A stretch of DNA of 64,000 nt from Cyanophora paradoxa CCMP329 (GCA_004431415.1 QPMI01000224.1:1-64000); one strand, 5' to 3'; shown: positions 37,940 through 64,000, counted from the stretch's first letter. The notes: generated by a model from the letters alone, not told the origin. Numbers and translations are program-made.

Positions 37940-40900
37940 ATGAGGCTGCCAGCTCACGCGGTCTTGCTCGCGGTCGTCGTAGTGGCGGCTGCAGCGCTGC
38001 AGAACGAAGCCCCGCGGATCAGCGTTCCAGATGCGACAGCCGTGGTTGTAGCTTCCTCTTCGAGCAATGCGGCCCTGGCCGGCATCTCGGTCGCAGACAC
38101 GGACGCGGGGACGAGCGCGTTGCTTGTCGTGGTGGAGGCGCAGTTCGGGCAGCTGAAGTTCAGCAGCTCGCCTCATGCAGCCATCAGCAGTCTCAGCAGC
38201 AGCGGTCCAGCTGCCGCGATATCCTTCACTGGGCCACTGTCGGCAGTCAACGCCATGTTTGCCAACTCGAACTTCCTGTACACAGCCACTGCGGGGTTCG
38301 CGGGTGTGGACGCCGTGCGTATCACAGTAGACGACCAGGGAAACACAGGCCAAGGAGGAGCACAAGCAGACAGCGCTCTCATCAACGTGCGCGTTCTGGC
38401 GGAGGACACGGCAACCGTGAACGATGCGCCGGGCCTCTACTTTCCCCTTGTCAAGAAGGTCATGTTTGCAGGCCCCTACATTGCTGATGCGGACTCTGGC
38501 TCCTCATCCCTACGTTTGACGGTCTCATCAAATCTCGGGAAGGTCTCCCTAGCCAACACCACCGGGCTCAACTTCACGGAGGGCACTGGCGTGAGCGATC
38601 AAATGATGATCTTTACGGGGACGCAGGAGAGCCTCAACGAAGCCGTGCGGCAACTAACGTACTTGAGCGAGGGCTATGGATGGCTCGACACCATCCGGAT
38701 CTCTTTGGACGATCAGGGCGCGACGGGCACTGGCGGGACACGCACAACGTACTACTCGATCGACCTTATGCTTAACGCGTACAGCAAGACGATTGAGCCG
38801 AGTGTCACATCGGTGTTTCCCCCTTCAGGTCCGGACACTCTCTCATGCCAGGTGTCCACTCTGACCAGAGCCCTGGCGCAGGACCAAGCTCGGGTGGTAC
38901 AGTCGTCACCGTTCGAGGTGGGGGCTTCGTCAGCTCGGATAATCTGCGCTGTCGCTTCGATTCTCTCGTCGTCCCTTCCACCTTCGTCAGCGACAAAGAA
39001 CTACGCTGCGAGACCCCGTCTGGCCTGTCGGGCCTCGTTGTCGTCGAGGTGTCTAACGACAACATCGCCTTCTCTTCAAGTGGAGTGCAGTTCGAGTTCT
39101 TTGGTGCACAAGAGTTTCCTACTGTTTCTTTTTCTTTCTTTCGGCTGACCACGCCTTGCCCCAGTTACCCCACGCATTCAAGCTCTTTTTCCCGCATCCA
39201 CCGCTTCCCTCGGCGTTTCGCTTGTGCTTTTCGCCGGGACGAACCTCATCTCCACAGGCACTTCACAGTCTCTGTGCCAGATTGGAGAGGGGCGTCCAAC
39301 GGTGGGCCGAGCGCTCTCGACATCCTTCGTGCTCTGCGAGGCATACCTGTCCACCTCACCGACGCTGCAAACGTTAGCCGCTCGGCTTGCCTCCGATGGC
39401 TTCACCTACATTCCTGTCGATGTGAAGCTTGGCTTGCTGAGTGCGTCTCCAGCACTACAAGACCACCAAATCTTATTGCAGCTGACGCTTTTTACGCAGA
39501 GACCTCATTGGCGACAGCTGCCCGACCCCAATCAACGTTCTCGACTGGAGGATCGCTAGTGGTGCTTGCCGACGATGGATCGTCTCCCACATACAGCGAG
39601 GGTTGTCGCTTCAGTCGGGTGGTGGCAGCTGCGGAGGTTGGCGGTTGCAGGGCACCTGCTTTGGTCCCGCAGATTGCTTCTTCCACAGAACTAACGGGTC
39701 CAGATGGGACCCTCGCGTTGGTCTCTGGCACTGCCGTTCGAGTCGCAGGTACATGTGAATCGACGGTTTCTCGATTTCCTCGAGTTTTTTTCTGAATGTC
39801 TTTTCTCGTGGCAGAGGCTCCAAGGCTATCCAGCATTTTGCCTTCAGCGGGGACGACTGAGGGAGGCACATCTGTTACTGTAATTGCCCGCAATATTGTC
39901 ATCGGACAGGCTTACATATGTCTATTTGGCGTCACGGGCACGGTCGCGAACGTAATCGACGACACCCGCCTCGTCTGTGAGTCACCTCCGCACGGGGCCG
40001 GCTTTGTAGCTCTGCAGATTGCATTGGACCAAGCATCCCATGCGGAGAGCAATGCTCTTCTGTTCGAATATCAGGGTGCGAAATTTATTCGTTTACAATC
40101 ACTCTGTGCAAGATAGATTTGACGGCGAGCTGCAGCCTCGTCCCGCATCCGGACCATCGTCCCTTCTCGAACATCTCCGATATCAGAGCCCCTGTTTGAT
40201 GTTAATGGTGATCACTTCTCGAGCTCTGACATTATTTCGTTTTCTGAAGACATCGGTACACCTCTCCGAACACTGTCGTCATCTTTCGGCCTCTTCGAGC
40301 TCCGAACGCCCGGCATCGACTCTGCTGAATCCTATCAACACTTGCAGCGGAAGGACGAGAAGCTCGTACGTGTTTGTTGCGGGAGCAGGTCTGCTGACGG
40401 CAACTGCGGTCCTACCGTCGTCATCTCTGGTTATCGATTTGATTGGGTCTGTTTATGACACCGGATCGCATCTGAACTTCGCTATCGCAGCTTCGCCGGC
40501 ATTTGCGACCGATCCTGTTTCCACTTCCGCTTCCGGCGATGGAACTGTGTTGTACTTGGCGGGAATCGGATTTCGTGAAACGGGCAGCCTCGTTGTACGC
40601 CTCGTGAGAAGCATCGTCCTTAGGCTTCAGTGGATGAGCTCGTCATTGATGGGATCTGTTTTGCCAAGCATCTTTCCATCCAACGACGTACACGTGCTCG
40701 ACGTCACTGTTGATGGTGTCAGCATTGCCGGCGACATCATCTCGGATGTGCTTCACACGCCAGCATATCTAGAGAGGCGGAGCGCTGTCGCGTCGCTCAT
40801 ACCTTCTGGTGACGGTGGCATTCTAGTTATTTCGACCGTCATCTCGACATCGCACACCGCTTCATCTTCTTGCGTGGTTTCGGGTTTGCCGGTCCCAATG

Positions 40901-43900
40901 TCGGCCCTCTCCACCAACGTTGCTCTCTGCGTTCCTCCTAAGCGCTATGCCGGATTTGCCATCGTCGAAATCGCATCGACCTCTGGCATAGCTTCGGTTC
41001 TGTTGGACATCCCAGGTTTGCATCGATCTCGACTTTCCTGCCCGCGAGCTGATCTTGCGCTGCAGAACGCGGCTCGCTGTCCGACGCCACCCCCGGCACG
41101 TGGATGCAGTCGGGGCCAGATGTGATGATAGTCACCGGATCAGGTTTCGCGAGCTCCGACTTCCTTCGTTGCCGATTCGGTTCTTCGCAAAACCCCGTCC
41201 CTGCAAGGCACATCTCGTCGTCTGCCCTCGCCTGCGAAATTCCACTGGAAGCCATTGAAAAGCAGTCAACGCCGACCGCCCTCTCCATTGAACTTATCGA
41301 TGTGATGGATACTCAAACCTCGCTGTCCATCGCGGTAGTTCCGGAGGTTGCTGTCTCCTCCGTGCAACCGGTGGCGGCTTTATCTGGCACCGGCATCTCC
41401 GTCAGTGTTTTGGGGACCAATTTTTCAGCGGGAGTAGTGTTTTATTGTGCTTTCGGTCGCACAATTTGGGTTCGCGCGGACGTACGAGGGCAAGGACTAT
41501 GCATTTGCCAGGTCCCAGCGAGCTCTCGCCCGACTCTCTTGATATCCATTACAACCAATCCCGGATGGACTACGAACAACGCCGCTGCTCTATCTATGTA
41601 TGGTGCGCAGTGCCCTTTGTTGCGGCACTCGGTTTTTCTCGACTTAAGCTGGTGACAGAGAGTGCAAGGGTGTTCTTGCCGCGAGCAGTTGCTGTATCAT
41701 CTCAGGCCGTAACGATTATATCGAAACGAAGTGCCAGCGCTCTTGTGCTGAACTCTCCATTATCTTGCGGGATCGACTCTTTGGTTGTAGAGAGCTACGC
41801 ATTATCCGTTTCCGCACTCCAGTGCCGTCTTCCAGCTTCAGCGTCGGGTTTCGTGTCGGTTGCTCTTGTGGCGGATTCGTCCACCCCGTCTACGTTTCAA
41901 AGTATCGTCTCCATTATCGGTTCGTGTCTAACGCTCCCGACGCTGTCATCGGACCTGAACACAGCACAGGTCGCCCGGAGCTCACATTTCCGATCCCACG
42001 AGTTGCGCCGTCCTCGTCCGTTGGCCTAGTGCTCTTGCGCGGGCGAGAGCTTCAAAACTTGCCGTGGTCGTGTCAACTTAGATATGGCATTCGAGGCCCG
42101 TCACGCGCTCTCTCTTCTGTTCTCGCCGTCTGCGATTTGTTTATGGATTCGTCGGCAACCCACGGATATACTACCATCCAAGCCGTCCTCCCTGGCGAGT
42201 TCGAAGATTCAACCTCCCAAGCTGCATCGATTGAGATCATTGGTAACTCTGTTAATGTTGGGTGTTTTCGTCTGAAATATGCGCCGCTGAGAGAGGGACA
42301 TCGTGCAGATAAGCCGCGCTTGATCAGTTTAAGTGAAGCTCTGGCTGCAGCGCACGGCGGTGACCGTATGACTCTGCGCGTAGCCTCAACATCTTCCCCA
42401 GACGCCTTTTGCATAATAGGGAGGGTGCTGGTGACGGCTCGATTCGTTTCGGGCGATTTTGAGTGCACACTTCCTGCACTCCCTGCAGCATCAACAAGTA
42501 TTTCCATCTCGTTTGATGGAAGCATGTACACAGTCGAATTTGCAAGCTTGACCGCGAAGAGTATATCCCCTCCATCCGCCTTGCTTTTTCTTTTTGTGAT
42601 TTCTTCCTCCTGTGTGGCAGGCACAGGCTCTGTTCGGGGCGAAGGCTCAGTAGCATCAGCCAGTCGTCTCTCACCGTCGGTCGTTCTTGTAGGACCCCAA
42701 ATATGTTCATCGGTGATCACGCCCCGCTGCCTCATGAACCGACAACAAGTCGCTGCGATTGCGATCAACGATAATGCGTGCATGTGTCAGTATGCCATTT
42801 TCGAGGAGCGTGGTTTCGCTGCTCTTTCGCTCTCCTTCGGGACGGCCTCCCTAAATTTTGAGCTCACTGGTGCGAAACCTTCTATGCAATCGATTCTTTA
42901 TTTGACCAGACTTTTCAGAGGACCCAGACAATATCAGCTTCCTTCCGCAAGCTGGTTACGGTGGATCGCTGATAATTGTTTCGGGGCGCGATCTGGCATG
43001 GGGTTCAGCATGCAGATTCGGAGGCGACAGTCGGTTTGCTCTGGAGGTGTTCTCATCGAGCGTTGGAGTTTGTGAAGTGCCGGTGACGTTGGCAGATGCT
43101 GCCGTCCTCGTGCACGTCAGTCGCTCTTCCGACGCCGTATTTGCTGGCACATCGCTGTCCGTTTACGCAACTGTGACAGGTGTGTTTTTCCAGTTCCTTT
43201 CTAAAATCTTCCGATCATGTCTTTGATGTGCTTGCCAGGGCTGTCTATTCCCATCAACATGACTGCACCTGTTCTCGCTGCGACTGGTGCATCACTTGTC
43301 GGGCTTCATACACGTCAGGTCTTTTCGCGAAGCCTGATTGCGGTGAGGATGAGGCAACGAGTGCTCGTGTGGGCGACCTTGCAGGACACTCCGGTTTATC
43401 AATTCAGATCGCCAAGTTTGCGGCCTGGGCTCGCAACTATCGACTGGAGCTGTAACGGTGTTGATTTTGTGAGCATCGCCAGTTCCGTTGCAGTTGCGGA
43501 GTATCGGAATGTACTGGCATCCTCCCCATCATTCAGCTTCTCGACCGGCTCGCCGCTTGTTAAGCTGGCCGTGTCTCCAAAAGCTGTAGCGCCGCAAGAC
43601 ATTGCGTGTGTATTCGGCACTGTCCGTTCCCCTGTCGAAAGACGATCGGCCTCCTCGGTCGCGTGCCCTGCTCCCACCGACGGGGAGGGCTTTGTTCAGC
43701 TCTCAATCGACACGGAAATGCCGAAGACCGCTGTTGTGTTCGAAGTTCGGGGTAAGCACTACAAGTTGTATCGTTCGCGATCCTCTTTAAGCTGAAGTTA
43801 ATCTTTTGTTTCTGCAGCGGCGCCAGCACTGTCTGGGTTAATTCCATCGCATGGGCCGTCGTCCGGTGGGACCCTCGTACTCATCACGGGCACGAATCTT

Positions 43901-46900
43901 GGCCCATTTCGGTTTTGCTCGTTTTCGGACGAAATCTCCATGCCCAGCCCTCCTTTGATCGTGAAGTCAACTGCGGCTGCCTTGTGCGAGGCACCAGCGG
44001 GGTCTCGTGGCACTCGCCTCCTACCAGTTCCGTCGTCGGGCGCTACTCGATCAGCAGCGTTCACTTCAGAAGGTCTGCGTCCAGCTCCGCTCCTGTCTTG
44101 TTGATCTGACCTGCAGCTGGTGGCAGACGTCGCACTCCCTCGGGCGATCCAGCCAGATCAGACAACGGAATTTGGCGGAAGTGCGATTGCCGTCTTCTTC
44201 GACGGCGGCGCATGGAATACGGGACTTGTTTGCGTGTTTGGTCTGCGGCTGTTGGTGGCAGGTGCAGTGGACGTGGATGGGCGCGTTATTTGCAGGACAC
44301 CTGCCCGCGTGAGTGGCACAGTCACAATTGACATCGGAGGATTTGCGTCAGACCTCTACATATCCTCAAGTGCTCTCACTGTCACGTATCGCCCTGCACC
44401 ACCGCAACTTGCCGGCTCGGCTTACATCGACGCGACGCCATCCATCTCGTGGGCCACACCCCTTGCAGGGCTCCGCAGTGGCGGAACACGTGTCATCCTT
44501 GTTGGAATGCGATTCAGCACGATAGATCCTATGTTTTGTGACTTTGGAGGACAATCTGTGCCCGCGAGCGTCACGTCGGCCAATTTGCTTGTATGCACGT
44601 CGCCACCTCTGAGTGCTGGTTTCGTTTTTCTTCGCGTCACTCTGAACGGGCGCTCTTCGCACACTTCTGTCATTTTTTCCAGCGATGGTACAATCGTCTT
44701 TTTCTAATGCGCTTGCTAGACTCACGATGTGCAGATGTATCCGCTACCGGTCTGCGTACAATTCCGTCTCTCTTGGTGGCCCTGAACCCAGCCATGGTCA
44801 TTCTGGAGGGCGCCCGCTCCATGGGGGTCAGTTCAGCGGCGGACGGCGTAACATCCTTCGCTGTGTCGTCTTTGAGCACTTCATTCCTGCGGATTATCTT
44901 GCCCGAAGTCCCGACAGGAACTTTTCGACTTGAGCTGAACAACAACGGGCAACGGCTTCCTGGTCTCGTCTCTTTATTTGGTTCTGCCGGTGCGCCTGGA
45001 CTTTTCGAGCTGATCTGCCGGTATCCAATAACGCTGATTCGAGCGATTCTAGTCCCCTCCGCAATCAATTCTTCCGTTGTCGAAATGGACGTGAAGGGCG
45101 GATTTCCCATCTCCGTTGCGAGCCAGTCTCCCGCTTTCTCTTCCGTCGCCTGCGTTTTTCGGAGATCTGTTTTCACAAAACCGCTGATTACGTCGTCGAC
45201 CACCACTGAATGCGCGGCGCCAGCGCTGCCGCCGGGTGACTTCTCTCTCTACATCACAGTTGGCGATGTGTTGCTCGGTCAATTGATCCCGCTGCGTGTT
45301 GTTGGTATGCGTCCTTGTTTAGAGGGTCGTTCACTGCAGCTGAATTGCAAGCAGATCTTGCACAGCGACCGCTTCGGCTCGTTTTCCCGTCATCGTTGAC
45401 GACAGGCGAAGACAAGCTAGTGATCGTGAGCTCGGTTGCATTGTCCAAAGAGGCGTCGTTGAGCATTGGAGGAATAACTGTGCCGACTGTCGCTGTTACA
45501 ACGGGTGACAATCGTGCAATTCTGCAAGCACCTTTACCGTCAAATACAAAACCTTCGATCATTCAGCCCATGTTGATCTTGAGCTCGGGTAATGCCGTAC
45601 CGCTTGCAGATTCCCTTCTTGTCACAGGTACTTCCCTGATTGATTGGTGGCTGCAAAGCTGCAGTCGATTTCTGATCGAGTAATGCAGGCAAGATTCAAG
45701 TGACCGGAAGGCCATCCAAGCCCCTTGAGATGTACGGATCGTCGCTGTTGCTGCTCGAAGTGCTCAATGCTGTCATCAAGGGTCAGTCAGCGATGATATC
45801 TGGAGTCGCTGAACGAATAGGCGTACGAATTATAAGCTCAGCAGTGATAGCTCTGGAAGCGCCTACGACGACGGCTGCGCCGAGCCTTGCCGAGGTCATT
45901 TTGTCCGTCGGCGCCAGCGATCAGCACACTCTGTCATTGGCACTGTATGCTACACACCACCCAACTTACGCGCTTCAAGATTCGGCTGTCACGCACGAAA
46001 TTGGTGGCGTCGTCATTCGCCTTTTGTTAAGCGGCAGCGTGAATAGCCACGTGCAGTGCTTGTTCTCCGCCAAGGTCGCCGTGATAGCCTACGTGCTGAG
46101 CGACAGACTTCTTCAGTGCATTCAGCCCGCCGGGAATCTCGACCAAACAACGCTGGATTTGATAATTGCTGGGACGATCATTCCGCAACCTGGTATTGCT
46201 TTATCGAAGCAAGGCATGCTGGTGCTCTGGCCGTGTATATGTGGCGCAGCTGACAGCTCTAATCGCGCAGGCGTACCTACCATAATAGCCGCAGCCCCTG
46301 CCCTCGATGCGGCAGTTCTCAACGGACGATTCGAGACTGAGATCGCTCCAGTGTGTCTCGCAAGCCAGTCCGCGTCACCTGGGATACTGCTCCATTCTCG
46401 GGCTGTAGCTTGCACTATCCCCCCGGCGCTTGTAGGCTACGCCGTGTTCGTCATTGGGGAGGCAAATATCGCAAGCAGTGCGTTCCAGCTGCACCTCGCC
46501 GGTGAGCTCGCTAGATTTATCGAAGCATGCTTCCTGTTGAAATCCCTTGATCTGTTGCTGGTTTGCAGAGCCTCCAGAGATTCGACTCATTGTCCCTTCG
46601 ATTATCAGCTCGAGTGGGTTTTCTCTTGTTTCGATTTCCGGGTTTTCTGTCGGCCTGCATGGAAGGGTTGGATGTGCTGTTGGAGACTCAGCGGTTGAAT
46701 ACATCGCGCATGCCTTCTCCTCCGCGCTGTTGGTCTGCGAGGTGCAGTCAACGTCAGCAAAAGGAGTGTCCAAGCTCCACATGATCACTTCTACCTTCTA
46801 CAGTGGTAGCGTGCCGACCGCTTTCATTCGCTCAGGTGCGTTCAGGCTAAGTCGTTGCCATCGTGCTTTTCGATGACAAGATGTACAGTTGCCGACGTGC

Positions 46901-49900
46901 ACCGGAGCGAAGCTTCCAATGAAATAGCTGTCGCAGAGGCCGGAGGATCAGAAGTAGAATCCACTCTGACGGTGGAGGGCGCATCCGGACATTGGAAATG
47001 CATTTTCGATGGCAAGCTGTGGGTCTCTGGCACAGAAATTTCTGGTAAACTTGTGTGCCGTTCTCCAGCCAAATCGTTGCCTCGGGTCGGGTCCTTCCAA
47101 GTCTCCCTCAATGGACTCGACTTCTCCACGAATCCAGTTGATGTCACCTACGTCGGCCTTAGGGCGCTTGGAGCCGCTCACGTTGCAGGCCGATCTGCTT
47201 TCATTGCCTTCTCGACCGCAGTTCAACACGATGCAGATTGGGCGTGCTTGGTTGGCGCGACGAGGATCTCCATGTCCTTTGTTGCGAGTCATCTGGCAGT
47301 GTGCAATCTGATCTCGTTGGAGGAAGGGTTTGCGAACCTGCAGATCGCATTATCCTCAATCCCTCTCGATTTTCCAAGCATCGTTGCGGATGCCCGAGAA
47401 CTCTCGCGGACAACCTCGGTGGCTCCGGTCATTTCGATGCCTGGATCGACATTGTTGCAGCTGGAAGGCTCTGCTTTCTCCAGCACTGACAACTTCTGCG
47501 TCTGGAACGAGGTGGTTCGTGTTCGAGCGCGAGTGGTTTCATCGTCAGCTTTGCTCTGCGAGGCTGTTTGGATGTCGTCTTCGGGCGGTGAACTTTTATC
47601 GGTCACGTCATCCGATTGGAAATCCATTTCTAGTACGACCGTGCAAATATTATCTACAGGCGCTCTTCCATCAGCAAGAATCTTAAGTTCAAGCTCCTCT
47701 TCAAATGGCGGCGCATCTCATCAGATTCCGCTTCTCTCCACGGCAACCGTGCTTTATTGCAGATTCGATGGGGACATCGTCATCGCTTTGCGCACTCTTG
47801 CTGGAACAACAGCGGACTGTGTATCGCCAGCCCACCGACCCATTGCAAGCGTTGGTGTAGAGTTCTCTCTGTCTGGCTCGGAGTTCGAGTATGCTTTCCA
47901 GCTTTCCTACGAAGGTTCGCCCCGGAATCGTTTTTGTCTCGAGAAGATCGCCAACGCCCTCGCCAGATACCACTTTGTATGTATCCGTGCAGCCCCAGAG
48001 CTTCCAAGTCATTGGAGGCACCCTCATGACCTTCTCGTCGAATTTGGCGCTGCCATCGACTGCTGCATGCGCCTTCAATGGGATCTCGACAGCCTCATCG
48101 CGTGTGTCCCTGCATACTCTGCAGTGTCTTGCGCCGCGGTTGAGCGAAGGTTTTTCTGTTGCCGCATTGTCCCGTCCGGCACTTCCATCGTCATGGGCGG
48201 CATCATCACTGCTAATCGAGGGCTTACAAAGCCCGCTCGTGTCGGGGGTTGTTCCCGGATTTGGTCGCACTTTTGAGTCCGGCTTACAACTGGTATACGG
48301 CTTATTTACTGCAAGCGATGTCAGCTGCGTTTTTGGAGCAAAGAGCTCAGCTGCAACCGTGCTCAGTTCTGCTGCTGCTGTCTGCGAAGCACCGATATCC
48401 ACTCGTGCCAGTGCAACGACGCTATCTGTAGTACTTCCAGCTGTCAGCGCTTCTGCACCACATTCGTTCCAGTACTTCGGTGCAATGATTTTCATTACAT
48501 TTTGTTACAATGATTCCGATTCGCTCCGTGTGCTTGCTTGTAGGAACGGAGATTGTAGCCCCCATACAACAACTCATTGCGCCTCTGAACGGCGGGGCTC
48601 GCGCGAGCTTTACCATTGACGCTACAGCTGGCGCCGTCTTCACTTGCCGCTTCGGCCGTTCCGTGTGGACCACGTCGACGCTGACGACAACAAATGGCTA
48701 TTGCGTTTCACCTGCCATGGCGCCACAGTCTTCTGCGCTTTGCATAGGCATGACGGATTCCGCAACCACGTGCGGGGTGTTGTCGATCCTAAGCGGTGAA
48801 CGTTGTTGTCAGAAACTTTGAGCTTTGTCGCATTGAAACATTCCCGCAGTTTACAATACGCGTGTGATGGTCTCTGAGCTGATCACGCTGCCTTCTGCCA
48901 GTCTCCGGATCGCATCGCCTGTTTTCCGTTTTGCAGAGCTGGCGATCGAGGCCAGAATAGGTGGAAGTACATGTAACGTTGTTAGCCAGATGGACGGTAG
49001 TGCCTCCTGTTCAATCTCCGTGCTCGACGTTGGATTCTATTCCGTGGAGCTTGTGGCAGGGACAACGTACTTACATCTGGGAGTCGTTTCCGTGCAAGGT
49101 GTTTGCGATTTGCACCGCTGCTCGTGCTGATTCAGGTATGACATGTGCGTTCGCAGAAAAACCTCGGAGTACTTCGTCGCGATGCGTTTCAGCCGGAATG
49201 TTTGATCTCGCGCACCTGACGGGGAGCTACCTGCACGAAAATCTTCCGTGGACCCGTGGTGATATGCCTGTATCGGGGCTCCGTCTTTTGAGTTCCTCAA
49301 GTGGGGTGATTGAAGTGGAGTACCGCGGTCGTGCCGGCGACTTCACTCTGGGATCTGTTCCATTAGAATTGCAATTCATTTCCGTATGCGCTCTCGAGAG
49401 CCAAGTGTATGCCGAAGACGAGTCAAGCCAAACCCTCACCTCTGGGCAGTACACATTCTCATCACGTCCTCTCCGTGAAGAAGCGGGAACGCTGTGTCGC
49501 TTCGGCAAGGTTACAGTCGCAGCATTGGGAGGTTCTTCAGTGGGCGCATGCCCAGTTCCTAGTGTGCTACAGCTCTCGCGAGTGGACATAGCACCAACGG
49601 GACTTACCTTCCAACACTCGGCCTCCATCATGCAACCTTCCTCAACTTTGCTTACGCCTCTTGGTGTGTCATTTCCCTCTTCTTATTTTGTTTCTCTGCT
49701 CACATTGCTGTGCAATCTAGATGCTACACCAGTGTCTTTTTCGCGGAATGCGGAAACTGCAGAAGTCAGCTTGTGGTGGTCACTGCCAGACTCGTTCCAG
49801 CAGTCGGTGACAAGCATCTTCTGCTCAGATGGCTTAGCAGCTTCGGCTCGGGTATATGTGCGGGACAGCACGCTTTCGTGCTCGATTCGGCCGTCGGTTG

Positions 49901-55900: not shown

Positions 55901-58900
55901 GGCGCTGTTTTTGTCGTCGTGGGGCGCGATGCTCTCCAGGCATCACTTGTCTGCCAGATCGGCGATTCACTGTTGGGGCAAGTCAGCGTCTCATCATCTC
56001 GTGCACACGCATGCATAACTGCAAGCGGGTCTGCTGGCTGGAGTCTGCTTGCGTTGTCTGGAGCGTTCGGAAGTGCCACATTTGCGTTCGAATACTTCGG
56101 TGTGCTTCTTCCTTATGTGCACTGTCTGCTTGCTCTGATCCGTCCAGCAGAGCCGCCCCAAGTTTCCCTCTCTGTTCCTGCAAGCTATGCGGCAAGCGGC
56201 GACATTGTGCTTCTTTCAGGACAGCTTTTTTCAGACTCCGACACGTGCACGACCCAGAACGGCAAGTTGTCATCGAGAAAACTTTCATCGACCGCAATTC
56301 TGTGCGAAATGCCGACATCTCAGCTCGGGTCCCACCAGCTGTGGGTCGAGAACAGCGTCAACGCAGTGAGCGTGTCCGGTCTTTCAAGTGAGATAGGAAT
56401 TGAGTTCGGCGTTCTTTTGGCGGGAGATGGCGGATCGCTTCTGTACATCACCAAGCTACCCTCCGATGGGCCTGTCTATCCCGTTTGCCATTTTGCACGG
56501 GTTGCTGTGTCATCCACTTCCGTGCTCGGGGGCACGGTTGCGTGCTGCTCCCCAAGTCTTCGGCGTGGTCCAACCACTGTGTCGATTGGCGTTCATGCTG
56601 GCGACGTTTCAGCTGTCGTGCTCCCAAGCGCTGTGAGAGGTGTGAGCTACTCGCTTATTGTTGCGCCGAAATTTGAAGCCCGCGAGCAGATCGAGTTCTG
56701 GGGAGACTGAACACTGGCCTTGTTCCCGTGCCTGGACACGCCTGGGTCTCATTTGCTTTGTCTTCACAAATAATCTCAGCGTTTTGCATGATTGGATCTT
56801 GGAGGATCCCAGCTGTCGTGACAGCATCACATGCAGCGTGTAAAGTCTCGGGCTTCAAAGACGGTTTTGCGACCGTCGCGCTTGAATCAAATGGCACCGA
56901 TGTAATGCTGAGCCATGAGTCGGTGGCGGAGTTCTTAACAGCAGCGTCCATTGTATCTGTGTTACCATCATCTGCGAGCGTTGCAGGAAACACGCTCGTC
57001 ACTTTCTCGGGCAGCAACCTCCTCAGCTCGACCTCCCTATGCACTCTTGCAGGCAAGGAGCCTGGGCGAGGCCGTCGCGTGTCATCCGCTGCCTTCCTCT
57101 GCGAGCTCCCGACATCGCGCAAGGATGTCAACAGTGCCGAGTATATACTCTCGCCGTCAACCGCACCCGTGAGTGCTTCACTCTCCTTCTTCGATGGTGC
57201 GTTTATTGGCGATTTTTTGCCAGTACTTTGTGTCTCGTCCCTGAGGCTGCTGCAGACTTGCAATGGCAAACATCGCCCATCGCTGTGCAAAGCGCGGAAA
57301 CTGGTGGGTCTGGCATCGGTGTGCATGTCCCCAGTCCTCTCTCTGCAAACACTCGGTCATGGCTTCGCGTGCACGGCCGTTTCCATGTGCTCCTGGACGA
57401 TACCACACAGTCAATCCTCCCAGCACTGCGCGCTGGACGATACTCCACTGACGTGGCGTGGAATGCTGTTGACTACAACTTCCTAGACATGACAGTGACC
57501 GTCTCAGGTGCGCTGTCTGTCTGTTGCGTGTTCGATTCGCTCGGACCTCCCATATTTTTGTTATCGCACAGATGCTGTTCGGGTCGGATCGATTTCTCGA
57601 GACATTGTAACAACCAGCGGCAGCTCCGTTCTTGATCTGTCTGGAGACAGTTTCACGGTTTCGAGCTGCATTTTTGGCACTGCCCAAGTCACAGGGCAGC
57701 TATTGTCAAGCCATGCATTGAGTTGCAGTGCACCCGTCAGTGCCGCGGGCTTCATAGCCTTGTCAGTGAGCATGTCGCGTGTGTCACTGTCGCTTTTGGT
57801 AGCAGGTATGTATCGCTTGGGGAATACGTTATTCTAACATTACTTACAATTAACACAGAGTCGCCCGAGAGGTTGAAGGTCCAGTCGAGAACTGTCATCC
57901 GCGGAGTCAGCATGCTCGTTGTGGAGTCGACGAACCTGCGCACTGGATCTTCATGCGTTTTCGACATGGATGCAGTGCAGGCCCGGGCAATCGTCATCTC
58001 GACATCGCTTGCACTTTGCGAAGCGCCCGTCATCTGGACTGGCTTGATGCTTGGTATCGCCGTTGAGCGGAAGAATGAAGCACATGCTTCCCTGGATGGA
58101 GGGCTGCAGACTTTGCCTGATCTCCTTGCGGTCTCCCCTTCGTCTGCTGGAGTATCGGGCGGCACAACGCTGTCGTTAACGAGCCGCGAGCCTCTTTCTT
58201 TGACTGCGACTAGTGTCTGCCGTATGGGAAAGATTCTGGTCGCTGCAGTTTATGATGGCGTTTCCGGATCAGCTCTGTGCTCCGTACCGAGCCAAGCCCT
58301 CAAGAAGACTTCGCTCACGGTCGATCTGTCTCTCAATCGCCAGGATTTCTCGTTCACAGCATTCGAAGTCGACCTGCATGGTAATTGATTTTCTATGCCG
58401 ATTATTTTGGTGCACTCACACACTTTCCTCGATTCAATATCAGATTCCGGGTCTTCGCCAGCAGTAATTCACGCCGACACGTCTTCAAATACTCTTATCG
58501 TTGCAGGGCGCGGGATCGGTGTCGCTTCAGCGTGCGTTTTGAACAGCCAGGTCCGATCACCGGCCAGCTCACAGCCATCGGCGCTCGCATGCTCCATTTC
58601 ATCAGCCGACTATGGCTTCTTGGCCGTTTCTGTGATTTCGTACCAGCAAACGATTCTGCTAGATTCAGGACCTGTGGCGGCTGTGATGGCGCCCAGCTTG
58701 TCACTCATTGTTCCTGCAAGTCCAGCTCGCGAAGGCCGCACTCTCGCTCATGTCGCTGGTACACACATGCTCAGCGTCGTGCGGATCCGGGCTGGCTCTG
58801 AGGTACTACTTGTGGATAACCGCGTATCCAGTGTGTTCGCATTATCGGAATTTGCGGCGCCGGATGCCACCACCGTATATTTGGCTGCCTCGCCGAATAA

Positions 58901-61900
58901 CGGACTCTCCATAAGCCCTTCAGATTTCGCCGTCAACGCAATTTCGGCATCTTTCAATGTGCAATCCAATGGTGGATCCCTTGTATCGGTTCGCGTCTCA
59001 TCCGCTGCAAGCTTCGGTCGACCCCTTTGTCGGCTACGCTCAGTCATCGTGCTCGGTTCAGCCGATGGCGCTTCTCTCCATTGCAGCACGCCTGCGTTGT
59101 CACCATCGCGCATTTCCCTCGAGACTTCATTCAACGGCGTTGACTTTTACGTGACCGATGTGATTATCCTTTTCTCCGGTCAGATTTTGCTGCGCAGATT
59201 CGTTGCCTTTGATTTTTCTTGAGTGTCCAATCCCTGCGCAGATCAAGCGATGTTGTCGTATGTGTCGCCGTCATACGTAGTGGCAGGCGAGCCTACCGTC
59301 CTATCTGTTGCAGGACTGCGGATGAAAATGGTCAAGGCAATGGCGTTCGACCAAATCACTTCGGAAGCAAGCAGTGAGGACAACGTGGCACGTGTCACTG
59401 CCCCTGTGTTGCAGACCGGCTTCGTGTACGTCAGAGACTTCGGGGGGCCGATGCAGCGTCAGCCATTGGTCGTTTCTGTGATCGGTCTGCCCCTTTTTGC
59501 GGAAAAGCCGGCCGCGACATTTGTTCTCATCTCTTTTTGCAGAACCATCGCAGGCTGGAGCTGTTTCGCCAGCATTCAGGATGTCTCTCTCCCCATCCCT
59601 CATCACTCTTTTGGGCGACTACCCTGTCGAACCCTTGTGTCACTTCGGCTCGCTCGGAACATCTCGTGGACGCTCATTATCAACAGCAATCGCCCTTTGC
59701 GAAGCGCTCTGCGATTCCGTTGAAGAATCGGCGGAAATAGTGTGGATATCCGGATTTAGATCCTCGTCAGGCACCATAGACATTCTTCGTGCGTGCAAAT
59801 TGCTTTGCTGACCTGTGCTGCTCTTTCTCACCTAGACTACTTTTTCTCACCTTTAACACAGCTACTGTATCTTGGAGACACGCTGCATTTGTTCCCTTCG
59901 AACAAGGAGGACAACAGCTCGTTGTCGGGGCTGGATCGATTTCCACAGCGCGAAGGACGCGCTGCAGGTTTGGTTCAGTACATGTGATGAGCACTGCAGC
60001 CACCGGTCTGGACGCAGAATGCGTCTCCCCGAGTCTGGTGCCGGGGTTCCAGTTTGATCCGGACTTCTCGATTGATGGGGAGATTTTCGATCGCCCAGTG
60101 CATGCGCTGTCACTCCTGCACATTGTCCAAGGTAAGCATCTCTTTTGAGAGCGCGAATCTGAATTTCCGACTGTTTTCTTTTCAGCGTCTTCCACCAGCA
60201 CTCTCGGTGATGCTGCCCTAGATGTCACGATGCCGGGTGAGCTGCGTTGCTTCGCTGCTGCTCCCTATGTGCCCTGATTTCCTGCAGATCTCGCGTTTGT
60301 CTTCGACGTGATTCCACAGGCTTTGTCTCGTTTGTCGTCGACGTTGGCTGTCATCACAGGAAGTGGATTTGTGTCATCACCGTTGACGCGCTGCGTCGTC
60401 CTGGAAGAAACCTCACCACTGCTCGTACTCTCAACCTGCTTTGGCGTATGCGAGCTCGCTACATCGTACGCACATGCCGGGGACGACTACGCTCAGCTAT
60501 TCATTCGCAACGCTCGCGATGCTGTGGGGCCGATTCTCCAGCTACGTGCTGAAAGTTCATCTCCCGTTCTCCCGCCCCGAGCAATTGTTCAGTTGCTCAC
60601 ATCCTCTCCAGATGAGATCGGAATGCGACTTCCAGCATCTCAGTTGTCGAGAGTGCCAGAGAGCGGTGGAATCGTAGTCTCGTTCCGTTCTGTCGCGTCG
60701 GACCGTCCCGTCTTCTGCAGATTGTCATCCGTCGCAACAAGCGCTCTTGTGAAGCAGTCCGGAGCTTCAGAATGCATCCTGCCTGCACACAAGCCTGGCA
60801 TAGCTCGGTTTGATATTCTGGTCGGCTCACAAGACATTTCGCATCCCCTAGGCGAGATCACATACTACAGTGTGTTGCTTGTTGTTTGCCCAAGTAGAGG
60901 ACGCCCTTAACTTGTTTGCATGCGCAGCAGCACCTGCAGGCTTGATTCTTTTGTCTACCCGCGTGTCCCGAGGCGGCCAGGTCACAGCAATGATTGGGTT
61001 GCGGCGAAACGCCGAGATGTCTGACCTGCAAATTGATGATGTTGGCCTGCTGGTACTTGATGCATCTCAGCTGGAAGGCACCTCTCCGCTTTCAGCCGGC
61101 TTTGCGTCCATTCTGAGTCTCCACGTTAGCAAGTCGTTTGCGACGGTATCTGTTTTCACAGGTATTTTGGCTCTCTGTAATGTATCTTTGTGGCAAGCGA
61201 TGCCGCTCACTGTCGTACAGATGGACCTGCCGTCCACACCGTCGTGCCATCTGCACTCGACGTCAGGGGAGGGCTGGTCACCGCATTGACGTCTCACATG
61301 GCCGATGCGGTCGCTGAGTGCCTCTGGGGAGTGGCGTCGACAGGCTCTGCTCGCCCACTCAGCACTGCTTTCGTTGTCTGTGATGGCGGCACATTCAGTG
61401 TGAAGGGTCATCTGCGACTTGCTGTCGCCACAAGTACATCCACTTCCGAAAGTTCGCCGGTATCAATCATGCAAGGTAGTCCTTCCTTTTTTGATGCTTG
61501 AGTGACCGGCGTTCTGACACCCATGAAGCTGCCGTGTCTGAATTCACGTTCTCCCGTCTAACGATCTCTTCTTTGGGCGGATCAACGGTGCCATTGACCG
61601 GATGCAGTGAACTTGATATACTGCCTGCGTGCTTCTTCGAGCAGATCCGGGTCGCATCCTACTGCCAGGGCGTTATGATCGTTTGCTCGGCCCCATCCTT
61701 TGTCGTATCCAACAAAGCTACTGCTGTCGGCTGGTCTTTCGGATCAGTATCAGATGCGTTCTCGACATCCCACGTTGCAGTTACAGGTGCGTTGTGCAGT
61801 GTCATTCATTTGAAGCAACGTCCTGAAAGGCATTGTCAGATGCGAATATCGTTTTTTCATCTGCGTCTGCAACCATGGCCACCATCACAGGCTCCGTTGT

Positions 61901-64000
61901 TCCTCTAGCTGGCATTGGCCTGTTGGAAGACAATTTAGTGTGCAGCGTTGGTGGGACGCACGGTCCAGTGACGTCTCTTTCAGCTTCGGCTGTCGGCTGC
62001 CACACTCCGAACCTTCCGCCTGCTTTTTATTCCATTTCACTTTCCGTGCCTGGTGCTACCTGGCCGTCTTTCGGTGTTGTTCTCGAGCTGGCAGGTACGT
62101 GAGCGCGCACCCAACATCCGGGCATCCGTGAGTCCAATAACCGCATCGCCCAGAACCATCGACTATCGTCGGCGCAGTTCCCTTGATTGCAGTGGAGTCC
62201 GACTTGATTCTGATCCGCACTGAAGGTCCATTGTTTCCCAAGGAAGGTCATACCCATCGCTCTTGGTCATCGGGCGTCGCTGTGGCCGCAGCTCCAGTTC
62301 TGACACTGGAACGCTTGGCGAGAATGACGTTCAGCATCAACGACATTTACGGCGATATGCAGGTCATCCCTCAAGCGCGCGTGTTCGGCGTCCAACCTCG
62401 AGTGGGATCTGGGAGTGGTGGAACGGTCGTCACCGTGTTTGGCGAGAATATTTCTCGTCTTCCTTCGCCTCGTTGCCGTTTCCATGCTAGGTTCTGGGTA
62501 GCTGCGGTCTGGCACACGGCTGGGAACATCTCGTGCTCATCTCCTGCACTCGGGGTTTCGTCCACAACAAGCTATGTGGATGTCACCAATGGTGGGGACT
62601 TCGCACCATCTTCGGCCAGCTTTAACGTTCCTTCCCCTATTACGATCGTTTCGGTGTCCACTTTAGAGGGCCTCCCTTCACGATCCTCGGCAGTGTTCAC
62701 TGCCCGCGGAGTCTCCTTGCCCGCGTCGATTGCCTGTGTCATCGCGGGCATACCGTTCCCAGCCGGCCATGTTGCCCCCAACTCGTTCGCTTGTCTGCTT
62801 CATAACCAGTTAATGGGCTTCGCGCCATTGGGGATTTCCAGTGAAAAAGCTATCTTCAGCTACGACGAAGGCTTGCAAGTGTCCATTACCAGTGCGCTTA
62901 TGCGGCAGCCTTTCTAAATGCGGTGTTTGTGTCCTTGACGCTTGCCGCAGAGGATCCAACTCCATCAAAGGCTCTGATCCCTCCGTTCATTGACCAAACA
63001 GATGGCGGGATCTTCAGCATTTCTGGAGGTGACCTGTTGAGTCTGGGCGAGAAAAGCCGATGCGCACTGTCGGATGGAAGAATGCTTGATGGGCGCGTAT
63101 TGTCGTCTGGGTATCTTCTATGCGATGCTGCCGGTCCGTCAACTGAGGTAACTTCCGTGGTTCTGAAGTCGAACACCTGGTTTTCAACCAACCTTCCTTT
63201 GTCTGGCAAAGGTTGGTCGATTCAGGTTTCCACTTTTCCTTGCTTGCGCTCACCGTCGCTCAGTGCGGCCCGGGCTTGGCGCTGTGGAGCCCTCAGTATC
63301 CAGTGAAGAAGGCGGTGTGGCCATCTTCGTCCAGCTTTCGACACCGATGTTGGAATCGGACGGAAGCCGTTGCTTCTTTGGCCTTAAAATCTGGGTGCTG
63401 GCTACTGTGTCAGCATCGGGATTGTCGTGCATTTTCCCTGCGATGCGCCCTGGCTCTGTGCTCCTGACTTTGTCCGTCGACGGCACCTGGCATGTTGACG
63501 CTTATCAAGTAATACATGCACTTGGTGCACAGTTTTCCTTATTGCAGCTCTATGCTGTCTGTGCGCTGACCTTTTGTTTAGCGCCCATTACTCGCACGTG
63601 GGCAAGTATGCTAACCGGATCTACTGCTGGCGGGAGCCTCGTCATTTTCCCCGTCGTTCAGACATCACCTCAAACTTTACTGGGTGTTCAATGTGAAATC
63701 GATGTGACCCCCGTGCCGCATGTTTACATGTCTGCGGACCTTGTCGGTTGTGTCATCCCGCCTCGTAGGCAGGCTGTGTACTCACTGGCACTCTCCCACG
63801 GCTCAAAAGCATCGCCATCCACCTCGTTTACTTTCTCAGGTATTCAATATTCTTCGCAGCTGTAAGCTGACACAGCAACCTTCAGTGACATTCCGTGCAG
63901 TGCCCCCATCTCCGGAAGGCCTTGCACTTCCGCAATTGAACCCTCTCGTCGTTTCGGCGCTGGCCATTTTGACTGGCAAACACATCCCATCTGATGTCTC
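37940..64000 (+). CDS. Giant secreted/cell-surface protein: signal peptide, two cadherin/Ig-like repeats, about 85 IPT/TIG-like domains; 3' end lies beyond the window
   Basis: MRLPAHAVLLAVVVVAAAA. Canonical IPT units such as PSVTSVFPPSG|PSSGGTVVTVRGGGF...CRFD...CETP...VEVSND, and VFGVQPRVGSGSGGTVVTVFGEN...CRF. Frame changes coincide with short GT-AG introns (38829-38881, 39104-39164, 39749-39814). I did not verify every junction. Confidence 0.85.

What the first reader, a model, noticed from the sequence alone, without database searches (positions are those of the whole stretch)
38790..64000. Giant IPT/TIG protein built from a regular three-domain super-repeat, about 28 copies at about 880-nt period
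Seen: the degenerate IPT units cycle through three subtypes. A is GG..v.v...C.f...C.sPa...S.nG.dF, B is C......GF.x.l, and C is R.lSs...lCE.p. C-type motifs recur near 39310, 41205, 42104, 43046, 43960, 44865, 45830, 46710, 47530, 48360, 49285, 50164, 51060, 51887, 52757, 53630, 54505, 55395, 56280, 57075, 57993, 58820, 59672, 60425, 61353, 62258 and 63095, with a weak one near 40250. An A and a B unit lie between successive C units. I see no obvious DNA-level identity between copies, which suggests an old expansion. Known: IPT/TIG arrays occur in plexins, fibrocystin and the Dictyostelium Tgr allorecognition proteins, and higher-order Ig super-repeats are characteristic of titin. Inference: a protein of more than 7000 aa forming an extracellular filament, ruler or coat scaffold some hundreds of nm long with 3-domain periodicity. 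This is the best candidate for an undescribed system in the window.
Basis: partly seen in the sequence, partly recalled or inferred. Interest (0 to 1): 0.82.

Follow-up and report, generated by a model that had tools for sequence, protein, structure and literature searches.

The report
Giant algal IPT-domain filament gene
This stretch is the first 7,500 residues of one expressed algal gene that strings together 84 antibody-like (IPT) domains in a strict A-B-C order. It belongs to a widespread but unstudied family of giant protist surface proteins that may build the long sugar-coated IPT fibrils recently seen by cryo-EM in pond water.

Summary
One + strand gene starts at ATG 37940 with a signal peptide and runs off the window end. 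My model has 61 short GT..AG introns, 60 of them phase 1, and gives a 7,517-aa reading frame with no stop. Spliced RNA contigs support 16 introns and an open 1,959-aa frame over 37940-44687.

The gene encodes 84 IPT/TIG units of about 86 aa. Similarity peaks at every lag that is a multiple of 3 (z = 14, 0 of 5,000 shuffles). Unsupervised clustering gives ABCABC..., and 82 of 84 domains fit their position. One A unit is missing near 60.2 kb.

It is not unique. A profile search found 272 strong relatives, giant "hypothetical" proteins of stramenopiles, green algae, a malawimonad and an oomycete. Of 56 testable relatives, 24 also show a period of 3.

Most likely this is a long extracellular, probably O-glycosylated filament. 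The closest physical match is the TLP-IPT glycofibril, whose gene is unknown. Function, the C-terminus and the role of the triad remain inferred. First-reader notes of this scan report the same gene and triad continuing in the next window.

The parts
37940..38005 (+). Start codon and signal-peptide-like N-terminus (about 22 aa, hydrophobic core).
   Evidence: Translation. It is the only hydrophobic 19-mer in the 7,517-aa model. By my arithmetic, RNA contig X1 record 1 reaches about 200 nt upstream of this ATG.
37940..38828 (+). Exon 1: signal peptide plus about 270 aa of non-IPT N-terminal region, with two roughly 100-aa repeats carrying DxDxG and NDAP-like motifs. The first IPT unit begins at 38813.
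   Evidence: No Pfam family passes threshold (weak Big_9, E 0.5). The only PDB sequence match is a weak one to protocadherin (E 0.4).
38829..44734 (+). Sixteen RNA-supported introns of 47-66 nt, all GT..AG and all phase 1: 38829-38881, 39104-39164, 39441-39499, 39749-39814, 40076-40135, 40430-40490, 41016-41065, 41603-41658, 41920-41969, 42243-42308, 42561-42620, 42870-42918, 43180-43238, 43752-43817, 44073-44126, 44688-44734.
   Evidence: Joints in spliced contigs of runs X1-X4, with boundaries resolved. The last intron rests on a loose contig end that matches 10 of 12 letters after the acceptor. With the 15 introns seen as joints, 37940-44687 reads as 1,959 aa with no stop.
38813..63998 (+). 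Array of 84 IPT/TIG-like units of about 86 aa in the order (ABC)x24, then BC, then (ABC)x3, then A. It holds 28 B units at a mean spacing of 881 nt and is cut by the window end. A-unit starts: 38813, 39835, 40784, 41673, 42644, 43520, 44453, 45381, 46273, 47161, 47987, 48870, 49735, 50645, 51433, 52406, 53230, 54140, 54983, 55871, 56707, 57592, 58455, 59262, 60945, 61860, 62657, 63602.
   Evidence: Gene model; domain slots; periodicity; classes; coordinates.
58444..59178 (+). Single exon encoding one complete A-B-C triad (d67-d69). It was used as the reference triad for the structure prediction.
   Evidence: exon-to-class map. The AlphaFold2 model with a 104-row alignment has mean pLDDT 81.8 and shows three beta-sandwich domains. 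Foldseek top hits are the plexin-A and MET IPT regions.
46889..47914 (+). Longest exon (1,026 nt), encoding C-A-B-C (d27-d30). It shows loss of three inter-domain introns.
   Evidence: Pfam TIG hit.
60132..60287 (+). Irregularity in the array: the A unit expected between d72 (C, exon 59862-60131) and d73 (B, exon from 60288) is absent. Either a 51-nt micro-exon (60186-60236) flanked by two good splice-site pairs remains, or the whole 156 nt is one intron.
   Evidence: There is no RNA evidence here.
51685..51775 (+). The only modelled intron that is phase 0 and 91 nt long. It is probably a local model error or an atypical splice; the d43/d44 units around it are degenerate.
   Evidence: There is no RNA evidence here.

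Best explanation
The region is the 5' part (7,517 codons, 62 exons in my model) of one expressed nuclear gene. Earlier notes of this scan name the organism as the glaucophyte alga Cyanophora paradoxa. After a signal peptide and a roughly 270-aa N-terminal region, the protein is an unbroken chain of 84 IPT/TIG beta-sandwich domains. The ancestral layout was one domain per phase-1 exon. The domains come in three sequence classes in the fixed order A-B-C, giving 28 triads. The most likely mechanism is as follows. The chain is secreted and forms a long, thin, beads-on-a-string extracellular filament. The window part would span about 275 nm at 3.3 nm per domain. The filament is probably stiffened and coated by dense O-glycans on its many Ser and Thr residues, as in the TLP-IPT glycofibril. 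By analogy with some relatives and with first-reader notes on the next window, it is held in the membrane by a C-terminal Cys-rich and multi-pass membrane part. The triad would give the filament a structural period of about 10 nm built from three different domain-domain junctions. Shown: gene, splicing, open frame, IPT fold, triad order, family membership. Inferred: extracellular filament (about 0.75), glycofibril or flagellar-hair identity (about 0.25-0.3), and a functional rather than purely historical triad (about 0.5).
For: Gene and expression: spliced RNA contigs give GT..AG joints of 47-66 nt and an open 1,959-aa frame. The model trained on those introns threads 26 kb with no stop, using 60 phase-1 introns with a median length of 57 nt. 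Introns sit at one fixed linker position, 7.7 aa before the domain start, at 57 of 83 boundaries.

Fold: Pfam TIG hits. Profile against PDB gives plexin-A1 at 1.5e-41 and MET at 1.7e-27. The AF2 triad model has pLDDT 81.8, and Foldseek ranks plexin and MET IPT regions first.

Triad.

Secretion: a signal peptide is the only hydrophobic segment, and each domain typically carries 2 Cys.

Family: 272 relatives at E<=1e-30, proteins of 3-8 thousand aa from stramenopiles, a prasinophyte, a malawimonad and an oomycete. A period of 3 is significant in 24 of 56 of them. Some relatives end in ephrin-receptor-like Cys-rich repeats plus 7-10 hydrophobic segments.

Filament precedent: the TLP-IPT glycofibril is more than 600 nm long, has more than 200 consecutive IPT domains of about 86 residues, a rise of 32.7 A and 13 O-glycans per domain, and its gene and host are unknown (bioRxiv 10.1101/2025.09.30.679562). 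This array has 18.4 Ser+Thr per 86-aa domain (21.4%). C. paradoxa flagella carry long narrow hairs of unknown composition (PMC6704402).
Against: Only 16 of 61 introns have RNA support, and RNA was laid on 6 kb only. The rest of the model is computational, and its splice matrices were trained on the RNA introns. The C-terminus lies outside the window and I could not read it, so membrane anchoring rests on unverified first-reader notes and on relatives. No glycosylation, localisation or proteomic data exist. The inter-domain geometry of the AF2 model is uncertain (pTM 0.49). I did not compare the TLP-IPT structure-derived sequence with this gene. The TLP-IPT authors' best BLAST hits were cryptophyte proteins, and their map was refined with a one-domain asymmetric unit, which neither shows nor excludes a triad. 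Only 3 alignment columns are at least 50% Ser/Thr, so fixed glycosylation positions are not evident. Class motifs could persist merely because each domain type needs them to fold.
Confidence: 0.6

Rival explanations
1. The triad is only history. The array grew by repeated duplication of a three-exon cassette, and the class motifs survive because each domain type needs its own core residues. The period of 3 has no higher-order structural or binding role, and the protein is simply a long spacer.
For: All exons are symmetric phase 1-1, which is ideal for cassette duplication. Period-3 patterns in relatives come with much higher copy similarity (mean SW 56-115 against 32 here), which fits recent cassette amplification. 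Whether their classes are homologous to A/B/C could not be shown (44 against 36 in a sign test, p=0.43). One A unit could be lost without ending the frame.
Against: Within-class identity is down to 19-21% with no decay over distance, yet unsupervised clustering still assigns 82 of 84 units to the class their position predicts. Only one register slip occurs in 84 units, although in-frame exon loss is mechanically easy. Both facts suggest selection on order. The same period recurs in many distant lineages.
Confidence: 0.35
2. It is a cell-cell recognition or adhesion receptor, like Dictyostelium Tgr or plexins, in which many IPT domains present variable binding surfaces, possibly diversified by exon choice.
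For: IPT arrays are typical of surface receptors, and the best sequence and fold matches are plexin and MET ectodomains. Symmetric phase-1 exons would allow in-frame exon skipping.
Against: No Sema, PSI or other ligand-binding head passes Pfam thresholds in the N-terminal region. Every RNA joint found is a short consecutive intron, and none skips an exon. Eighty-four or more domains far exceed any known receptor stalk. The copies are old and saturated in divergence rather than recently diversified.
Confidence: 0.12
3. It is a mechanosensory tether. The filament pulls on the C-terminal multi-pass membrane module, which acts as a channel or signalling unit, comparable in logic to the PKD2-mastigoneme link in Chlamydomonas cilia (my own knowledge, not checked here).
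For: Relatives P0019, P0022 and P0039 carry 7-10 hydrophobic segments after the array. A first-reader note reports a polytopic module at the end of this gene (s1-511118).
Against: The membrane module has no Pfam, PDB or Atlas match, so nothing says it is a channel. The C-terminus of this gene was not seen by me.
Confidence: 0.15
4. It is not a functional single gene but a decaying array, an assembly artefact or several short genes.
For: Two local anomalies in the model: a phase-0 91-nt intron at 51685-51775 and a 51-nt micro-exon at 60186-60236. GC content is far below that of the flanks. Five of the 84 slots were interpolated rather than found by the HMM.
Against: A 7,517-aa frame with no stop is obtained using almost only 47-75-nt phase-1 GT..AG introns at one fixed linker position. 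Spliced RNA contigs come from at least three studies. DNA runs hold the stretch completely. There is no DNA-level repeat that could mislead an assembler.
Confidence: 0.03

Closest known systems
TLP-IPT glycofibril (CryoSeek, Tsinghua Lotus Pond; bioRxiv 10.1101/2025.09.30.679562)
   Same: One polypeptide of consecutive IPT domains of about 86 residues with nothing between them. The scale is hundreds of nm and hundreds of domains. The source is a freshwater microbe. The array here is rich in Ser and Thr (21.4%), which is compatible with a dense O-glycan coat.
   Different: The gene and host of TLP-IPT are unknown, and its authors' best hits were cryptophyte proteins of about 1,000 aa. Its map uses a one-domain asymmetric unit, so no triad is described. 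I did not compare its derived sequence with this gene. Glycosylation of this protein is untested.
Plexin-A and MET/RON ectodomain IPT stalks
   Same: Same domain family by profile (E 1.5e-41 and 1.7e-27) and by fold. Tandem IPT domains with short linkers in an extracellular protein.
   Different: Plexins have 3-6 IPT domains behind Sema and PSI domains. Here there are 84 or more, with no Sema or PSI found, and three cycling subtypes.
Fibrocystin (PKHD1) and fibrocystin-L (PKHD1L1)
   Same: Very large surface proteins dominated by IPT/TIG domains, associated with cilia or surface coats (established knowledge).
   Different: They are about 4,000 aa with some 12-14 IPT domains plus G8 and parallel beta-helix repeats. 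None of these extra domains was found in the window part, and no triad is known for them.
Titin A-band super-repeats
   Same: A higher-order periodic order of domain types along a giant filament protein. Titin Ig tandems appear among the fold matches.
   Different: Titin is intracellular, uses Ig-I and Fn3 domains in 7- and 11-domain super-repeats, and is not homologous at the sequence level. It is an analogy only.
Unnamed giant IPT-array proteins of protists (for example Aphanomyces invadans XP_008870714.1 at 7,478 aa; Heterosigma akashiwo CAN0054030.1; Chrysoparadoxa australica CAM9095296.1)
   Same: True relatives: 15-41 matched stretches of the B-C profile among the proteins with E<=1e-100. 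BLAST alignments are colinear over as much as about 1,800 aa at 22-25% identity. Many have a period of 3. Some have a Cys-rich plus multi-pass C-terminal end.
   Different: Their copies are more alike, suggesting younger arrays. Most domains score as my C or A class, and B-type units are rare. None has a described function.

Membership tests
IPT/TIG domain (Pfam PF01833) | Sequence match to the family profile above the curated threshold | tested here: met
   Bit scores of 33-56 on several exons and stop-free segments, against a cut-off of 20.9. Many units fall below the threshold on their own but match a self-built HMM (79 of 84). The triad profile hits plexin-A1 IPT3-6 at 1.5e-41.
IPT/TIG domain (Pfam PF01833) | Ig-like beta-sandwich fold of the IPT type | tested here: met
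   The AF2 model of one triad has pLDDT 81.8 and shows three all-beta domains. Foldseek ranks plexin-A and MET IPT regions first, at E about 1e-6.
Plexin / MET receptor family | N-terminal Sema domain and PSI domains ahead of the IPT stalk | tested here: not met
   No Sema or PSI hit in the N-terminal 296 aa or in any exon scanned, even at E<=1.
Fibrocystin / PKHD1L1 | G8 domains and PbH1 parallel beta-helix repeats among the IPT domains | tested here: not met
   None was found in the exons and stop-free segments scanned. The slots of the window model are all IPT-like units (79 of 84 by HMM), which leaves no room for such domains. The part beyond 64000 was not seen.
Fibrocystin / PKHD1L1 | Single C-terminal transmembrane helix or GPI anchor | not testable with these tools
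   The C-terminus lies outside the window, and the look-up of encoding contigs gave no record to walk on.
TLP-IPT-type glycofibril | Uninterrupted run of IPT domains of about 86 residues | tested here: met
   84 consecutive slots with a mean spacing of about 86 aa and linkers of only a few residues.
TLP-IPT-type glycofibril | More than 200 domains, or at least 20,000 residues, in one chain | not testable with these tools
   There are 84 domains in the window and the frame is still open at 63998. First-reader notes claim about 33-43 kb more of the gene, which would give roughly 190 domains. I have not verified that.
TLP-IPT-type glycofibril | About 13 O-glycans per domain on Ser/Thr, and sequence match to the structure-derived sequence | not tested
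   Composition only: 18.4 Ser+Thr per domain. The derived sequence had no reference usable in the tools. No TLP-IPT entry appeared in the PDB searches.
Titin-like super-repeat architecture (as a way of working, not as homology) | Domain types recur in a fixed order with a constant period along the chain | tested here: met
   Period 3, z=14, with 82 of 84 units in register.
Dictyostelium Tgr-type allorecognition proteins | High allelic polymorphism and paired receptor-ligand genes | not tested
   No strain comparison was possible. The laid contigs showed no variant letters, but contigs hide variants.

The most novel reading that the evidence does not exclude
This gene, together with its continuation in the next window (roughly 190 IPT domains and 19-20 thousand residues if the first-reader notes hold), is a genomic example of the so far gene-less TLP-IPT class of glycofibrils. 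In Cyanophora it would build the long narrow flagellar hairs or a surface fibril coat. It would be anchored by its own multi-pass membrane module, and the conserved A-B-C triad would set a structural period of about 10 nm that one-domain helical averaging has hidden.
Probability: 0.2. Interest if true: 0.85.

Novelty: new variant of a known kind. Interest (0 to 1): 0.62.

Why it matters
Giant IPT arrays turn out to be a widespread family in protists: glaucophyte, green algae, stramenopiles, oomycete and malawimonad. The family has no described function. A regular three-domain super-repeat, so far a hallmark of titin-type muscle proteins, recurs in it. A cryo-EM study has just reported pond-water fibrils made of more than 200 consecutive IPT domains, and states that their gene, host and function remain to be determined. 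This gene family has the right domain size, continuity, composition and scale, in a culturable freshwater alga with a genome and RNA data. That makes the question testable by proteomics of Cyanophora flagellar hairs and culture supernatant, by cryo-EM without one-domain symmetry, and by glycoproteomics. The gene is also a clean example of exon-domain correspondence: one phase-1 intron at a fixed linker position, with about 26 later losses.

Tried and rejected
1. DNA-level repeats: TRF and the repeat finder found nothing relevant.

2. Early gene models: models without a phase or exon-length prior recovered only 2 to 12 of the 15 RNA introns and invented micro-exons. They were replaced by a model with a phase-1 prior and a minimum exon length.

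3. Word search (search for homologous proteins) with the 341-aa exon: one weak hit. This is uninformative because of the length filter.

4. The joined spliced protein model was never handed to a search tool. All searches used single exons by reference. The joined model was used only inside my own scripts.

5. Alignments A1 and A2 misplaced single A-type exons. A3 (B-C di-domains) was used for the big search instead.

6. Single-sequence AlphaFold2 of the triad gave pLDDT 38 and was discarded.

7. Triad-unit co-duplication: Mantel tests between the A, B and C similarity matrices showed no signal (r about 0, p 0.3-0.7), and there was no decay with distance. The history is saturated.

8. Homology of the relatives' three classes to A/B/C: 44 forward against 36 reverse, p=0.43, unresolved. 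My class HMMs label most of the relatives' domains C or A.

9. C-terminal modules of relatives: only Ephrin_rec_like was found. The multi-pass part has no Pfam, PDB or Atlas match.

10. Walking beyond the window with the look-up of encoding contigs: no record.

11. N-terminal region: no significant family.

12. Literature: no paper on IPT proteins in Cyanophora or on IPT super-repeats was found.


Full report
**Setting**

The window is very GC-rich, 70-80% in 2-kb bins. From about 37.5 kb to its end the GC content drops to 52-58%. Earlier notes of this scan name the organism as the glaucophyte alga Cyanophora paradoxa. I did not verify this independently. The short introns and high genomic GC agree with the published genome description of 67.6% GC and many short introns (PMC6704402).

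Stop-free segments on the + strand hop between the three frames, and several match Pfam TIG (PF01833). A profile built by iteration from one such unit finds 45 units, all on the + strand, about 280-340 nt apart. There is no DNA-level repeat.

**Gene structure**

- **RNA evidence.** Contigs of four public runs, from at least three studies, were laid on 38800-44799. That is the 6,000-letter limit set by the operators. They show 15 joints, all GT..AG and 49-66 nt long, and none skips an exon. One loose contig end supports a sixteenth intron at 44688-44734.
- **RNA-only frame.** With the 15 joint-supported introns alone, 37940-44687 reads as 1,959 aa without a stop. Every intron is phase 1, and each exon encodes one or two IPT units.
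- **Extension to the window end.** I wrote a dynamic-programming model with codon log-odds, splice matrices trained on the RNA introns, a phase-1 prior and a minimum exon length.
  - It recovers 14 of the 15 RNA introns; the missed one is an in-frame 60-nt intron.
  - It predicts no false intron in the RNA-covered stretch.
  - It threads the whole region to 63998.
- **Final model.** After adding the missed intron and repairing one spot by eye, the model has 61 introns. Sixty are phase 1, the median length is 57 nt, and the range is 47-91 nt. The frame is 7,517 aa with no stop and is still open at the window end.
- **Intron position.** Introns sit at one stereotyped place, 7.7 aa before the HMM-defined start of a domain. 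They are present at 57 of the 83 domain boundaries. The ancestral state was therefore one IPT domain per symmetric phase-1 exon, followed by about 26 intron losses.
- **Weak spots.** Forty-five introns are computational only. The phase-0 intron at 51685-51775 and the 51-nt micro-exon at 60186-60236 are doubtful.
- **How the model was used.** The joined protein model was used only inside my scripts. All database searches were done exon by exon by reference, and I left the joined search out.

**The protein**

It starts with a signal-peptide-like N-terminus, which is the only hydrophobic 19-mer in the model. About 270 aa follow that have no family assignment: two repeats with cadherin-like DxDxG and NDAP motifs, with only sub-threshold matches.

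Then come 84 IPT-like slots of about 86 aa. Seventy-nine are found by HMM and five were interpolated. Most domains have two Cys. Ser+Thr make up 21.4%, or 18.4 per domain. Lys is 1.1%.

**The super-repeat**

- **Lag analysis.** Local-alignment scores between slots average 36-39 at lags 3, 6... 30 and 28-32 at all other lags. The period-3 contrast lies 14 standard deviations above 5,000 order-shuffles, none of which reaches it. Periods 2, 4, 5 and 7 give nothing.
- **Clustering.** Clustering from random starts, blind to position, returns ABC repeated. Given one missing A between d72 and d73, 82 of 84 slots agree with their position.
- **Tree.** On a maximum-likelihood tree the class label needs 13 changes, against 35-42 in the ten label-shuffles printed.
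- **Motifs.** The mean period is 881 nt.
- **Age.** Identity is 19-21% within a class and about 16.5% between classes. It does not decay with distance, and the similarity matrices of the three classes are not congruent. The expansion is therefore old and its history is erased, yet class identity and order are kept.

**Relatives**

- **Word search.** It is limited to proteins of similar length to a single exon and found almost nothing.
- **Full HMMER search.** I used a B-C di-domain profile built from window exons (A3). It found 2,477 proteins at E<=1e-3 and 272 at E<=1e-30. The best are 3,000-8,000 aa long with 30-40 matched stretches.
- **Similarity.** None exceeds about 30% identity to the window protein. 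Some BLAST alignments are colinear over as much as about 1,800 aa.
- **Sources.** Those that carry a source name come from:
  - Heterosigma akashiwo, Chrysoparadoxa australica and Epipyxis (stramenopile algae);
  - Aphanomyces invadans (an oomycete; 7,478 aa, 'IPT/TIG domain-containing protein');
  - Mantoniella beaufortii (a prasinophyte);
  - Gefionella okellyi (a malawimonad).
- **Annotation.** All are hypothetical or unnamed, and the rest are metagenomic.
- **Period 3 in relatives.** Among 56 relatives with a regular run of at least 15 domains, a period of 3 has z>3 in 24 and z>5 in 8. Periods 2, 4 and 5 reach z>3 in only 1-2. A three-domain super-repeat is therefore a recurring trait of the family.
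- **Are their classes homologous to A/B/C?** This is unresolved. A sign test on cyclic order gives 44 against 36, and my class HMMs call most of their domains C or A. A few metagenomic proteins show ABC strings.
- **C-terminal ends.** Some relatives end in ephrin-receptor-like Cys-rich repeats followed by 7-10 hydrophobic segments with no Pfam, PDB or Atlas match. This agrees with a first-reader note that the present gene ends, about 41 kb beyond this window, in a Cys-rich stalk and a polytopic module. I could not read that part, and the one attempt to fetch the contig failed.

**Structure**

Folded alone, the single-exon triad 58446-59177 gave a useless model with pLDDT 38. Folded with an alignment of 104 triads (two from the window, the rest segments of relatives; A4), the model has pLDDT 81.8 and shows three beta-sandwich domains. 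The pTM is 0.49, as expected for beads on a string with uncertain junction angles.

Foldseek ranks plexin-A ectodomains, MET IPT domains and then titin Ig tandems. The A4 profile hits plexin-A1 IPT3-6 at 1.5e-41 and MET at 1.7e-27. The domains are thus bona fide IPT domains. The Sema, PSI, G8 and PbH1 domains that define plexins and fibrocystins are absent from the window part.

**What it most likely does**

A signal peptide, disulfide-type Cys pairs, the IPT fold and an unbroken 84-domain chain point to a long extracellular filament.

The closest physical precedent I found is the TLP-IPT glycofibril from pond water:
- it has a central chain of more than 200 consecutive IPT domains of about 86 residues;
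- its helical rise is 32.7 A per domain, and it carries 13 O-glycan chains per domain;
- it is more than 600 nm long, implying a chain of at least 20,000 residues;

The present family has the right domain size, continuity, Ser/Thr richness and scale. The window part alone would span about 275 nm at that rise. If the first-reader notes are right, the full gene would have roughly 190 domains.

Cyanophora flagella carry 'long, narrow' mastigonemes of unknown composition (PMC6704402). These links are inferences. I give the specific glycofibril or flagellar-hair reading about 0.2-0.3.

The triad may define three different junctions and a period of about 10 nm, or it may be a frozen trace of cassette duplication. 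The strict register over 84 saturated copies and the recurrence of period 3 in distant lineages favour some constraint. They do not prove it.

**Verdict**

It is a new variant of a known kind, an IPT-array surface protein, belonging to a large uncharacterised protist family. First-reader notes of this scan (s1-511118, s1-511217) report the same gene and triad on the adjoining DNA.

Noticed in passing
window 37500-64000 against 1-37500: The giant gene is a low-GC island: CDS 55.4% GC, GC3 only 56%, introns 49%. The flanks are 70-80% GC and the published genome mean is 67.6%. Exon 1 is intermediate (GC3 72%). The cause is unknown; it might be weak GC-biased gene conversion, low expression or a different origin.
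   Followed up: partly
window 37940-38828: The N-terminal 270 aa ahead of the IPT array contain two roughly 100-aa repeats with DxDxG and (V)NDAP motifs reminiscent of cadherin or bacterial Ig-like adhesin repeats. No family passes threshold (Big_9 E 0.5; protocadherin E 0.4). In BLAST, some relatives align from about residue 183-203 onward.
   Followed up: partly
window 60132-60287: This is the only register break in the array: one A-type unit is missing. A 51-nt micro-exon with good splice sites on both sides may be its remnant.
   Followed up: partly
relatives P0019:5179-7340, P0022:3923-6152, P0039:4801-6196, P0003:6464-7233: Several giant relatives end in ephrin-receptor-like Cys-rich repeats and a block of 7-10 hydrophobic segments with no Pfam, PDB or Atlas match. 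This is an unnamed multi-pass membrane module fused to IPT filaments.
   Followed up: partly
run X1: The longest contig in this presumed RNA run is 18,755 nt, so very long transcripts were assembled there.
   Followed up: no
relatives P0120, P0045: Some relatives show other regular orders under my class HMMs, such as a strict CBCBCB... alternation or a five-unit CACAA pattern. This suggests the family explores different super-repeat lengths.
   Followed up: no
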